A stretch of DNA of 43,716 nt. Source: Salpingoeca rosetta (Eukaryota > Protista > Choanoflagellata). The position numbers were made by a program, and so were the translations under genes. The stretch is from the NCBI GenBank assembly GCA_033442325.1, contig JAWQFM010000030.1:508361-552076 (forward strand), in the 5' to 3' direction. The stretch's first letter is position 1. Each line of letters opens with the position of its first letter. The notes under the pieces were generated by a model. It had not been told where the DNA came from, searched no databases, and saw only the letters and a program-made list of their open reading frames with translations. Shown here piece after piece: positions 35,547 through 38,170 of this stretch.

Positions 35547-35600
<54 letters not shown>

Positions 35601-35629
35601 GCACGCACACACGCACGCACACACGCATC

Positions 35630-37595
35630 CTAGCACTCTTCAGGGCAGTTGATGAGGGACAAGCCGGAGTGAGTATCCACACACGTGGCATTCACGTTCT
35701 TGCAGTCCACGTGAGTCAACGCGCGGGTGAAGAAGAGGTCAATCTTTCCACCCACATGCGTCATGTTGCCAAAATCAATGCTGGTGAGCATATCGTTAGC
35801 AGAGATGATAATGTCTCCATCCACGCTGGTGATGTGGCCAAAGTCGACGGTTGTGAGGATGTCATTGCTGTAGAGCTTAATGTCCCCGCCCACGCGCGTC
35901 ACGTTGCCAAAGTCAATGCTGGGCAGAGCGGCGTTGTCGATAAGTTTGAGGTCTCCATCTACGCTGAGAGCACCGCGAAAGGCCACATTGGTCAGGGCGA
36001 CGTTGTAGGACAGGCTGATGTCTGTCCTCACACGCATGAAACTGCCAAAGTCAATCGTGGTGAGGGCATCGTTGTTGTGGAGGTAGATGTGTTTCCTCAC
36101 GTCTCTGAGCCCGCCAAAGTCAATCGTGGTGAGCGCGTTGTTGTGGCCAAAGAAGACGTATTCGGCCACATTGGAGAGACTGTCAAAGTTGGCGGTGGTG
36201 AGGTTGTCGTTACCGAGGATGGAGACATATTCCCCCACGCTTGTGAGACTGCCAAGGTCAATGCTTGTGAGCGCGTCGTTGTGTTCAAGCCGGACGCAGC
36301 CTCCCACGTGCGTGATGGCTGGAAAGCTGATACTTGGGAGGGCAGCGTTGAACCGAAACATCAAATCCTCGCCAACGCTGGCAAGACGGCCAAAGTTGGC
36401 GTTTGTCAGCGCATCGTTGCCGACGAAGTCGATGCCGCCGTCAAAGCTGGCGGCAAGTCTGGCAAAGTTGACGCTTGTGAGCGCTCGGCAGGAGGAAAAG
36501 CGTATGTACCCGCCCAAGCTGGTGATGTTGTCGACGACAACCTGGGTGAGACTGGAGCTTTGGTAGAATCTGATGTCTGCACCGACGCCGACCATGCGAC
36601 CAAAGTCAACGCTGGTCAGGGCCGGGTTGTCTTCGAAGTGCACGTATCCATCCACGCTTACAATGCGATCAAAGTCAACGCTGGTCAGGGCGACATTGTC
36701 TTGAAGACGCACGTCGCCACGCACGTGCTTGATGCTGACAAAGTCAACACACGTCACCTGCCTGCTGGAATAATCCAAGGCGGAAATCTCCCCATGGGTG
36801 CCGTAGAAGTGTTTGCAGCGGTCCATCGACAAGACGACGGGCACAGCAACGCACACCGCGGCAACCACAGCAATCAAGACGGCCAGGAGGGCTTTGGCCT
36901 TCCAGCTCGTCCAGCTCGTCCAGCTCGTCCAGCTCGTCCAGCTCCAAGCATGCTTTACTGCAATGTCGGCCAAGTTGTCGTCGTCAGAATCATCCTCGAC
37001 CAGGTGCTTGCCGGCAATGACAATGGGCTTGACGAGGCGGCTGCTGTCGCTGATGGCACGTGCTCCGCGGTTCTTGTCTGCATGTACGTCGGCGGAGGCT
37101 GAACCGAGTTGCTCGTACCACAAGGCATTGGCGCCACGGCCAGTGGCGTTGTGCTCATAGCCCAGCAAAGGAAAGCTGGCGCTCACCCTTGCGTCGGTTT
37201 CAGATGCAGCAAACGAAGGGTTTTGTAGGTCCGTGACCGACTCGGGCACTGGCCCTGGCTGGTGTGTGGCCCGTGAGGCGACGACGGTGATGGGCTGCCA
37301 GTACGGACGTGGTGCCGCAGCGTGTGCGCCACTCTGCTGCCCCACATCGTGTTCGGTCGAGACCCATACTGCCTGCTGCAACGATGAACAACGATGAACA
37401 ACGCAGCATTCGCGCCAAAGGCATAGCCCGTTGCACACATGTGACCGCAATTGTGTTTACAAGCAGCACATGACACGAGCGAAATATCCATAGGGAACAC
37501 GCATGACGTGTGAGATGATGCGCAATTCAATTGGAAATCCTCCAAAAGGCACGCACTAAGAGGCATGAAAGCCACATGCACACAATTAAACAAAT

Positions 37596-37648
<53 letters not shown>

Positions 37649-38170
37649 ACAAACACAAACAGACAAACACAAACAAATAACAAACACACAAACAACCGCA
37701 CACACCTGAAGCTTCGCCAGGATTTGGTCCACCATGTCTGCGGGCACTGGCATGGCTGGCGTGTCTCCGCGCTCAGGCACCCAGCGATATTGCGCTGCGC
37801 CGCTGGTGGTCAGATAGAACTGTGCCTCGGGCTCAGCAAAGTCACCGTCGCACATGCGCACGAGGAAGAACGGCTTGTGTTGGTTGACGACGTACTTGAG
37901 GATGCGGTTCGTGTTGAACGTGCTATTGGTTTGCTGTCCGTAGGTGCGTGTGCCCAGCAGCACAGCCAGCTTGCATGTGTGCAAAGCTCTGATCGAAGCC
38001 GCGGCAGCGTTGTCATCCGGCACGCTCTCGCACAAAAACACGCGGAGGCCATGCGCCCTGAGTGCGTCCGCCAGGCCTCGACCGGCATGCCCTGCCTCCG
38101 CAATGCGCAGGGAGATGAAGATGTCATAGCCCTCGAAGCTGCTCATGCTCTTGCTGGCGTGGTGTGCCAT
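35630..38170 (-). CDS. TIR domain - transmembrane helix - ~15 x 23-aa LRR / receptor-L-like repeats (type II membrane protein)
   Basis: Exon 1 38170 (or 38146)-37706: YDIFISLR..AGRGLADALRAHGLRVFLC..IRALHTCKLAVLLGTRTYG..KPFFLVRM (TIR_2-like). Phase-0 GT-AG intron. Exon 2 37375-35630: linker, KAK, ALLAVLIAVVAAVCVAVPVVLSM (TM), then repeats of consensus [DY]-[IV]-x-[LF]-x-x-N-x-A-L-T-[ST]-[IV]-D-F-G-x-[LI]-x-x-V-G-G and a Cys-containing C-terminal cap. Confidence 0.8.

What the first reader, a model, noticed from the sequence alone, without database searches (positions are those of the whole stretch)
35630..38170. Inverted Toll-like receptor: N-terminal TIR, type II transmembrane helix, C-terminal LRR-like solenoid
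Seen: a TIR-like exon splices in frame (phase 0, GT-AG) to an exon with a linker, basic KAK before a 23-residue hydrophobic helix (positive-inside, so N-terminus cytosolic), and ~15 regular 23-aa repeats with flanking cysteines. There is no signal peptide. Established: TLRs are type I LRR-TM-TIR proteins. This protein has the same functional parts in the opposite order and uses a receptor-L/Ecm33-like repeat. Inference: an independently evolved pattern-recognition or cue-sensing receptor in a bacterivorous animal relative.
Basis: partly seen in the sequence, partly recalled or inferred. Interest (0 to 1): 0.85.

Follow-up and report, generated by a model that had tools for sequence, protein, structure and literature searches.

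The report
Type II TIR–membrane–LRR receptor-like gene
A two-exon gene of the choanoflagellate Salpingoeca rosetta most likely encodes a single-pass membrane protein with a TIR signalling domain inside the cell and a bacterial-type leucine-rich-repeat solenoid outside, the reverse order of a Toll-like receptor; it belongs to a small undescribed family, but its splice junction was not verified with RNA.

Summary
On the minus strand, an ATG-initiated 155-codon exon (38170-37706) joins in phase 0, through a GT...AG intron of 330 nt, to a 581-codon exon (37375-35633).

- **Exon 1 is a TIR domain.** The AlphaFold2 model has pLDDT 86, and all 50 best Foldseek matches are TIR domains.
- **Exon 2** holds a 158-residue linker with no detectable domain, the motif KAK, one 23-residue hydrophobic helix, and about 15 repeats of 23 residues capped by cysteines.
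- **The repeat region is an LRR solenoid.** It is modelled at pLDDT 94.7 as an all-beta solenoid, closest to BspA-type (LRR_5) leucine-rich-repeat proteins (4fs7, Z 22.8).
- **The architecture recurs.** The genome is S. rosetta. Six of at least 32 loci with this TIR subtype have the same repeat domain downstream on the same strand, against about 0.15 expected by chance. Two of them are public gene models with the same order, PTSG_02597 and PTSG_03080.
- **Topology.** N-in/C-out is inferred from several concordant features; it was not measured.
- **Catalytic residue.** This copy has Ile where 22 of 26 paralogues keep the TIR catalytic Glu, so it is probably not an NADase.
- **Not shown.** The RNA junction was not tested, because the one read-laying run failed. 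No ligand or function is known.

My verdict is a new variant of a known kind, of moderate to high interest.

The parts
37706..38170 (-). Exon 1 CDS, 155 codons: N-terminal TIR domain (strand A begins YDIFISL at residue 15; helix E ends ...ILAKLQ)
   Evidence: Translation. TIR_2 24.9 bits. AF2 pLDDT 86. Foldseek top 50 all TIR domains. Paralogue profile hits Roq1 and SARM1 TIR domains.
37901..37906 (-). Codons R89-I90 in helix C: the position of the TIR catalytic Glu, here Ile
   Evidence: Alignment A1. Column counts E22/Q3/I1. hhalign of A1 against canonical S. rosetta TIR domains (prob 93%) puts their invariant Glu on this column.
37376..37705 (-). Intron, 330 nt, GT...AG, phase 0. Its 5' part is a (GT)n-type microsatellite, and the AG-free tract before the acceptor is about 75 nt
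   Evidence: An intron sits at the same codon boundary in paralogues L002-L005, C10 and C6, and the public model PTSG_02597 uses it.
35630..37375 (-). Exon 2 CDS with stop codon, 581 codons
36902..37375 (-). Cytosolic linker, residues 156-313: no detectable domain; three Tyr (PYWQP, GYEHN, WYEQL)
   Evidence: No Pfam hit. No similarity to the SH2-bearing linker of PTSG_02597.
36901..36944 (-). Perfect 9-nt tandem repeat (4.9 copies) encoding (WTS)4-W next to the membrane helix
   Evidence: translation
36824..36892 (-). Single transmembrane helix, residues 317-339, preceded by KAK (314-316)
   Evidence: Hydropathy scan: the only segment with Kyte-Doolittle mean above 1.5, peak 3.1
36716..36823 (-). 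Ectodomain N-cap, residues 340-375, with C342 and C364 and a degenerate first repeat
35705..36715 (-). 15 repeats of 23 aa (consensus x-I-x-L-x-x-N-x-A-L-T-S-I-D-F-G-x-L-x-x-V-G-G), three beta-strands per turn
   Evidence: AF2 pLDDT 94.7. VIA-align 4fs7 Z 22.8, rmsd 4.0, 345 residues aligned. LRR_5 26.6 bits and Recep_L 21.3 bits.
35633..35704 (-). C-terminal four-Cys cap (C713, C720, C732, C736; ...NCPEEC), conserved in all paralogues examined
35547..35624 (.). (AC/GT)n microsatellite just 3' of the stop codon

Best explanation
The locus is one two-exon gene of Salpingoeca rosetta. It encodes a 736-aa type II (N-in, C-out) single-pass membrane protein made of:
- a cytosolic N-terminal TIR domain;
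- a 158-aa linker with no detectable domain;
- a signal-anchor helix;
- a C-terminal extracellular BspA-type LRR solenoid of about 15 turns, closed by a four-Cys cap.

It belongs to a family of at least six such genes in this genome. That family arose by joining an expanded N-terminal TIR module to an expanded family of type II LRR_5 surface proteins.

The most likely mechanism is inferred, not shown. The solenoid binds an extracellular ligand such as a bacterial or conspecific surface molecule. Binding clusters the receptors and brings the cytosolic TIR domains together. Assembled TIR domains then signal.

Most paralogues keep the catalytic Glu and could act as NAD-cleaving enzymes. Several carry an SH2 domain, which links them to phosphotyrosine signalling. 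This copy has Ile at the catalytic position and no SH2 domain. It more likely acts as a non-enzymatic scaffold, co-receptor or decoy that pairs with catalytic TIR partners.
For: **Gene model**
- ATG, GT and AG signals with a phase-0 join.
- Exon 2 has no Met before the helix.
- The same intron position occurs in 6 other paralogues and is used in the public model PTSG_02597.

**TIR domain**
- TIR_2 E 3e-5 in this copy. 19 of 26 paralogues hit TIR_2 and six pass the curated cut-off.
- The paralogue profile hits Roq1, SARM1 and SIGIRR TIR domains.
- AF2 pLDDT 86 with a five-strand beta-alpha fold.
- The 50 best Foldseek matches are all TIR domains, probability 0.99-1.00.

**Ectodomain**
- AF2 pLDDT 94.7.
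- Every listed Foldseek match is an LRR protein. The best VIA-align match is the LRR_5 protein 4fs7, Z 22.8.
- Paralogues pass the LRR_5 cut-off (110 and 54 bits) and the Recep_L cut-off (58, 45 and 30 bits).

**Architecture**
- 6 of 32 TIR loci have the repeat domain 0.9-3.4 kb downstream on the same strand, against about 0.15 expected by chance.
- Each has one helix between the two parts.
- PTSG_02597 (728 aa) and PTSG_03080 (860 aa) are public models with the order TIR, SH2, TM, repeats. The SH2 hit is sub-threshold in PTSG_02597 (18.9 bits, cut-off 21). In PTSG_03080 it rests on the UniProt name only; my Pfam scan listed none.

**Topology**
- Basic residues lie just before the helix in all copies.
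- Thr-rich mucin-like stalks follow the helix in paralogues.
- The four-Cys cap is conserved, and five of the seven N-x-S/T sequons lie after the helix.
- The same domain sits behind a signal peptide in PTSG_04244 and occurs with type IX secretion sorting domains in bacteria.

**Catalytic residue**.
Against: - No RNA evidence for the junction or for expression of this copy.
- The word shares in public runs are ambiguous. Runs X4-X8 hold 0.86 of the gene's words, which equals the exonic share. Run X16 also holds 0.86 and does hold the intron.
- No public protein containing exon 2 (searched at 320-1017 aa) or exon 1 (85-271 aa) was found. This copy may be unannotated.
- All three Pfam hits of this copy lie just below the curated cut-offs.
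- K/R counts on the two sides of the helix of this copy are equal (2 and 2). Orientation therefore rests on the family context.
- Ligand, signalling output and any link to bacteria are pure inference.
Confidence: 0.68

Rival explanations
1. These are two separate transcription units: a small soluble TIR-only protein from exon 1, and an unrelated surface-protein gene whose true first exon lies elsewhere.
For: No RNA junction was seen. Most members of the type II LRR_5 family have short non-TIR cytosolic tails, and most TIR-family members have other partners.
Against: - No ATG lies in the exon 2 frame before the helix, and no other candidate first exon lies between the two.
- The splice signals are phase-compatible, with an AG-free tract before the acceptor.
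- The donor falls at exactly the codon used in PTSG_02597.
- Six same-strand TIR-repeat pairs against about 0.15 expected by chance.
Confidence: 0.1
2. It is a decaying or silent paralogue: a recent duplicate that lost the catalytic Glu and the SH2 domain and is no longer used.
For: Ile replaces the Glu kept by 22 of 26 paralogues. It has no SH2 domain, unlike its closest TIR relatives. No public protein model was found. Microsatellites lie in and around the gene.
Against: - 736 codons are open with intact splice signals.
- Both domains are modelled at high confidence.
- All cap cysteines and the repeat consensus are intact.
- Loss of the Glu is normal for scaffold TIR domains; I state this from general knowledge, not from a test here.
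Confidence: 0.12
3. It is an adhesion or cell-surface structural protein. The LRR_5 solenoid mediates attachment (to prey, substrate or sister cells), and the TIR domain is only an oligomerisation or anchoring module, not a signal generator.
For: The closest solved folds are bacterial cell-surface LRR_5 proteins and adhesin-like solenoids. The ectodomain family has at least 44 loci, often with mucin stalks. This copy lacks the catalytic Glu.
Against: TIR domains are known as signalling or NAD-cleaving modules (general knowledge). Four of the six TIR-TM-repeat paralogues keep the Glu. An SH2 hit or an SH2 annotation in two of them points to signalling.
Confidence: 0.2

Closest known systems
Toll-like receptors (animal and choanoflagellate type I LRR-TM-TIR; Richter et al. 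2018, PMC6040629)
   Same: A single-pass membrane protein that pairs an extracellular LRR-superfamily solenoid carrying Cys caps with a cytosolic TIR domain.
   Different: - The domain order and topology are reversed: N-terminal TIR, a signal anchor, and no signal peptide.
- The LRR is BspA/LRR_5-type, with 23-aa all-beta turns, not LRR_8/LRR_4.
- The TIR subtype sits nearer plant NLR and SARM1 TIR domains in Foldseek rank than TLR TIR domains.
- The same genome has a true type I LRR_8-EGF-TM-TIR gene.
PTSG_02597 and PTSG_03080 (S. rosetta hypothetical proteins; the latter is named 'SH2 domain-containing protein' in UniProt, F2U468)
   Same: The same TIR subtype (45-55% identity), the same intron position after ...KL(K/Q) in PTSG_02597, one TM, and the same repeat domain and four-Cys cap.
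   Different: Their linkers carry an SH2-like region, and they keep the catalytic Glu. In PTSG_02597 the Pfam SH2 hit is sub-threshold (18.9 bits); in PTSG_03080 the SH2 rests on the UniProt name. This copy has neither an SH2 domain nor the Glu, and it has more repeats than PTSG_02597.
BspA-type LRR cell-surface proteins (Pfam LRR_5; e.g. BACOVA_04585, PDB 4fs7) and Receptor L domains
   Same: The solenoid fold: Z 22.8, rmsd 4.0 A over 345 of 398 residues. Sequence homologues are mostly bacterial Recep_L/LRR_5 proteins carrying type IX secretion sorting domains.
   Different: This is a eukaryotic type II membrane protein with a cytosolic TIR domain and its own four-Cys C-terminal cap.
Kinase TLRs and Kinase TIRs of choanoflagellates (Richter et al. 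2018)
   Same: Choanoflagellate-specific rearrangements of TIR domains with receptor or signalling modules.
   Different: Those are type I receptors or soluble proteins and contain kinase domains. This gene has no kinase domain and the opposite topology.

Membership tests
TIR domain superfamily (Pfam TIR_2 PF13676 / TIR PF01582) | Five-stranded parallel beta-sheet with alternating helices (flavodoxin-like TIR fold) | tested here: met
   AF2 pLDDT 86 with the order bA-aA-bB-aB-bC-aC-bD-aD-bE-aE. The 50 best Foldseek matches are all TIR domains.
TIR domain superfamily (Pfam TIR_2 PF13676 / TIR PF01582) | Score above the Pfam curated cut-off | tested here: not met
   24.9 bits against a cut-off of 28 for this copy. 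Six paralogues pass, including the 61%-identical C14 copy. PTSG_02597 passes PF01582.
TIR domain superfamily (Pfam TIR_2 PF13676 / TIR PF01582) | Strand A motif (F/Y)D(V/I)F(I/L)S and a Pro-containing BB loop after strand B | tested here: met
   YDIFISL at residues 15-21 and FLCESVPDD at 45-53. The family consensus for the latter is FLCxVxPG.
Catalytic (NAD-cleaving) TIR domains | Conserved Glu at the start of helix C | tested here: not met
   This copy has Ile90 (and Arg89). 22 of 26 paralogues have Glu. hhalign at prob 93% places the invariant Glu of canonical S. rosetta TIR domains on this column.
Toll-like receptors | N-terminal signal peptide, extracellular LRRs, TM and a C-terminal TIR domain (type I order) | tested here: not met
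   The TIR domain is at residues 15-155, the only hydrophobic segment is 317-339, and the repeats are C-terminal.
BspA-type LRR (LRR_5, PF13306) / Receptor L domain (PF01030) | Pfam score above the curated cut-off | tested here: not met
   LRR_5 26.6 bits (cut-off 27.7) and Recep_L 21.3 bits (cut-off 21.8) in this copy. Paralogues pass both cut-offs clearly.
BspA-type LRR (LRR_5, PF13306) / Receptor L domain (PF01030) | Right-handed all-beta solenoid with turns of about 23 residues, superposable on solved LRR_5 proteins | tested here: met
   pLDDT 94.7 with three strands per turn. 4fs7 Z 22.8; 4h09 Z 18.3; 4gt6 Z 16.4.
Type II (signal-anchor) membrane proteins | No cleavable signal peptide and a single internal hydrophobic helix | tested here: met
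   Hydropathy scan.
Type II (signal-anchor) membrane proteins | N-terminus cytosolic and C-terminus outside | not testable with these tools
   Inferred from a folded 316-aa N-terminal part and basic residues before the helix across paralogues. Also from mucin stalks and Cys caps after it and secreted homologues of the repeat domain.

The most novel reading that the evidence does not exclude
S. rosetta has a lineage-specific family of type II TIR(-SH2)-TM-LRR_5 receptors. It was assembled independently of TLRs and couples extracellular recognition, for example of bacteria, to TIR-based NAD-derived signalling and to phosphotyrosine signalling. The copy in this window is a catalytically dead co-receptor or decoy that modulates its Glu-bearing paralogues.
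Probability: 0.3. Interest if true: 0.8.

Novelty: new variant of a known kind. Interest (0 to 1): 0.6.

Why it matters
TLR-type receptors are the textbook way to join an LRR sensor to a TIR signalling domain. Their origin near the root of animals is an active question. This genome holds an ordinary type I LRR-TM-TIR gene and also a family that builds the same pairing in the opposite membrane orientation. That family uses a different LRR class and a different TIR subtype.

This would be a clear case of convergent receptor assembly in the closest relatives of animals. It also adds candidate receptors for the known bacterial cues of S. rosetta.

The family escaped domain-based surveys because its TIR and LRR hits fall at or below the Pfam cut-offs. 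S. rosetta is genetically tractable, so the idea can be tested.

Tried and rejected

**Word shares in public runs.**
- Runs X4-X8 hold 0.86 of the gene's words, which is what exons alone would give (2151 of 2511 words).
- They are not among the holders of the intron.
- Run X16 also shows 0.86 yet holds the intron, so I do not count this as splice evidence.

**Searches that found nothing.**
- A single-sequence phmmer search of exon 1 against PDB sequences gave only chance hits.
- Searches for a public protein of this very gene found none.
- A look for an SH2 remnant in the linker was negative.
- The genomic context of a metagenomic TIR-WD40 relative (P0123) did not show whether it is bacterial, viral or protist.
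- Literature searches for the paralogue names, for Receptor L domain in choanoflagellates and for N-terminal TIR type II proteins found nothing relevant.
- The S. rosetta TIR domain shown to make cADPR in the 2026 preprint (F2UB80) is a different, C-terminal TIR domain.

**Corrected reading.** The 2367-aa open frame at C10 looked like an intron-free fusion. It reads through a (GT)n intron at the same donor position, so I count it as conserved gene structure, not as an intronless fusion.

Full report
**Observation**

The gene lies on the minus strand.

- Exon 1 runs from an ATG at 38170 (context acgATGg) to 37706, 155 codons, and is followed by GT.
- The acceptor AG at 37377-37376 ends an AG-free, pyrimidine-rich tract of about 75 nt.
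- Exon 2 runs from 37375 to 35633, 581 codons, with the stop at 35632-35630.
- The join is phase 0 and gives 736 aa. A second AG three bases on (a NAGNAG acceptor) would give 735 aa in the same frame.
- The intron (330 nt) is largely a (GT)n-type microsatellite.
- The N-terminus is hydrophilic. The only hydrophobic segment is residues 317-339, preceded by KAK.
- Fifteen 23-aa units follow at residues 376-712. Two Cys lie before them and four after.
- Exon 2 has no Met before the helix, so it needs an upstream coding exon.

**Organism and family**

Protein hits name Salpingoeca rosetta. The genome holds at least 32 copies of the exon 1 domain and at least 44 loci with the repeat domain.

Six TIR copies have the repeat domain 0.9-3.4 kb downstream on the same strand. 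They lie on C30 (this gene), C4, C8, C9, C10 and C35. About 0.15 such pairs are expected by chance. Each has a single helix between the two parts, preceded by basic residues.

Two of the six are public gene models with this order:
- PTSG_02597 (728 aa): TIR PF01582 21.5 bits, above its cut-off; SH2 18.9 bits, below its cut-off; then a TM and the repeats.
- PTSG_03080 (860 aa), named 'SH2 domain-containing protein' in UniProt. My Pfam scan of it listed no SH2 hit at E 0.01 or better.

The donor site after ...KL(Q/K/E) is shared by paralogues L002-L005, C10 and C6. The PTSG_02597 model uses it, with an intron of about 320 nt.

**TIR domain**

- This copy scores 24.9 bits on TIR_2, below the cut-off of 28.
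- 19 of 26 paralogues hit TIR_2, and six pass the cut-off in the genome scan.
- A profile of the 26 paralogues finds Roq1 (E 5e-4), SARM1 and SIGIRR TIR domains as its best PDB sequence matches.
- The AlphaFold2 model (pLDDT 86, pTM 0.83) has the five-strand beta-alpha order.
- Its 50 best Foldseek matches are all TIR domains (plant NLR, SARM1/TIR-1, TLR1, TLR15, bacterial), at probability 0.99-1.00.

Profile-profile alignment with eight canonical S. rosetta TIR_2 domains gives prob 93% and E 3e-7. It puts their invariant Glu on the family's conserved Glu column. That column is Glu in 22 of 26 paralogues, Gln in 3, and Ile only in this gene. From established knowledge of SARM1 and of plant and bacterial TIR domains, this Glu is needed for NAD cleavage. 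This copy is therefore probably not an enzyme.

**Ectodomain**

- Residues 339-736 are modelled at pLDDT 94.7 as an all-beta solenoid with three strands per 23-aa turn.
- Foldseek lists only LRR proteins.
- The exhaustive VIA-align search ranks the BspA-type LRR_5 protein 4fs7 first (Z 22.8, rmsd 4.0 A, 345 residues aligned). Other LRR_5 structures follow: 4h09 at Z 18.3 and 4gt6 at Z 16.4.
- The Pfam hits of this copy are just sub-threshold: LRR_5 26.6 against 27.7, and Recep_L 21.3 against 21.8. Paralogues pass both.
- Sequence relatives are mostly bacterial Recep_L/LRR_5 proteins, many with type IX secretion sorting domains.

**Topology (inferred)**

In this copy alone, K/R counts on the two sides of the helix are equal. 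Across the family, the evidence for N-in/C-out is consistent:
- Basic clusters precede the helix.
- Thr-rich mucin-like stalks follow the helix in the C8, C10, C15, C3 and C35 copies.
- A four-Cys cap ends every copy.
- Five of the seven sequons of this copy lie after the helix.
- The same domain sits behind a signal peptide in PTSG_04244.
- Other members of the ectodomain family have short N-terminal cytosolic tails and the same type II layout.

The 'inversion' therefore follows from the TIR module being joined to an inherently type II surface-protein family.

**Context**

The TIR module is also fused to other partners in S. rosetta: a tetraspan LHFPL-like domain plus SH2 (PTSG_05359), DUF5074 (PTSG_02868), and COR and ARM parts (PTSG_12838 and PTSG_08034, by their UniProt names). 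In Microstomoeca roanoka it is fused to ARM repeats. A search of 1.84 billion representatives found 597 proteins at E 1e-10 or better. Among the best 150, only the two S. rosetta models show TIR-TM-repeat.

The genome also encodes type I receptors:
- SP-LRR_8-EGF-TM-TIR at C17.
- Furin-repeat-TM-TIR at C20.

Richter et al. 2018 (PMC6040629) defined choanozoan TLRs by the order LRR, TM, TIR and described Kinase TLRs. I found no paper describing the reverse order.

**What is missing**

RNA support for the junction is missing, because the single read-laying run was lost. Word shares in public runs are compatible with spliced transcripts but ambiguous. No public protein model of this copy was found. 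Orientation, ligand and output are untested.

**Verdict**

This is a real, intact gene that very probably encodes a type II TIR-TM-LRR_5 membrane protein. It is one of a small undescribed family in S. rosetta. It is not a TLR by membership but resembles one in logic. This particular copy is likely non-catalytic.

Noticed in passing
L068:1487-5209 (G000 C17:943986-947708, + strand): A single 1241-aa open frame with a signal peptide, nine LRR_8 hits, an EGF-like Cys region, a TM (followed by QRERLKK) and a TIR_2 domain with the LLEYE catalytic motif. This is a canonical type I TLR-like gene in the same genome.
   Followed up: partly
L069:270-3548 (G000 C20, - strand): A 1093-aa open frame with furin-like Cys-rich repeats, a TM at residues 496-524 and a TIR_2 domain at 536-644: a type I furin-repeat-TM-TIR receptor.
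   Followed up: partly
L070:1604-4363 (G000 C26, + strand): A 920-aa open frame with Ras/Roc GTPase, PH, protein kinase and TIR_2 domains and no TM. It resembles the 'Kinase TIR' class of Richter et al. 2018, with an added GTPase.
   Followed up: no
L016 (G000 C14:1316000-1323000) = PTSG_05359: The closest TIR paralogue (61% identity) is fused to an SH2 domain and a four-helix LHFPL/claudin-like tetraspan domain instead of the repeat ectodomain.
   Followed up: partly
L063, L064, L065, L066 (G000 C15, C3, C29, C14): There is a large family (at least 44 loci) of LRR_5/Recep_L surface proteins. The C15, C3 and C29 copies are type II, with short Tyr-rich cytosolic tails. The C15 and C3 copies have long poly-Thr mucin stalks, and all four loci end in the same Cys cap. 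C29 carries two such genes in tandem.
   Followed up: partly
window 36901-36944: A perfect 9-nt tandem repeat (4.9 copies) inside the CDS encodes (WTS)4-W directly before KAK and the membrane helix. It could be a length-variable Trp-rich juxtamembrane segment.
   Followed up: no
window 37370-37380: A tandem NAGNAG acceptor (gcagCAGgca): either AG keeps the frame, and the products differ by one Gln.
   Followed up: no
P0123-P0134, P0215 (metagenome proteins); L067: TIR domains 50-60% identical to the S. rosetta N-terminal TIR module occur in metagenomic proteins fused to WD40, ankyrin, Sel1, beta-helix, kinase or MORN parts. The organism of origin could not be told from a 10.6-kb locus of one 42.8-kb contig.
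   Followed up: partly
I worked beside them and sent none of their letters to any tool afterwards.
   Followed up: no
window 35630-38170: No public protein containing exon 2 (searched at 320-1017 aa) or exon 1 (85-271 aa) was found, although paralogues are annotated. This copy may lack a gene model.
   Followed up: partly
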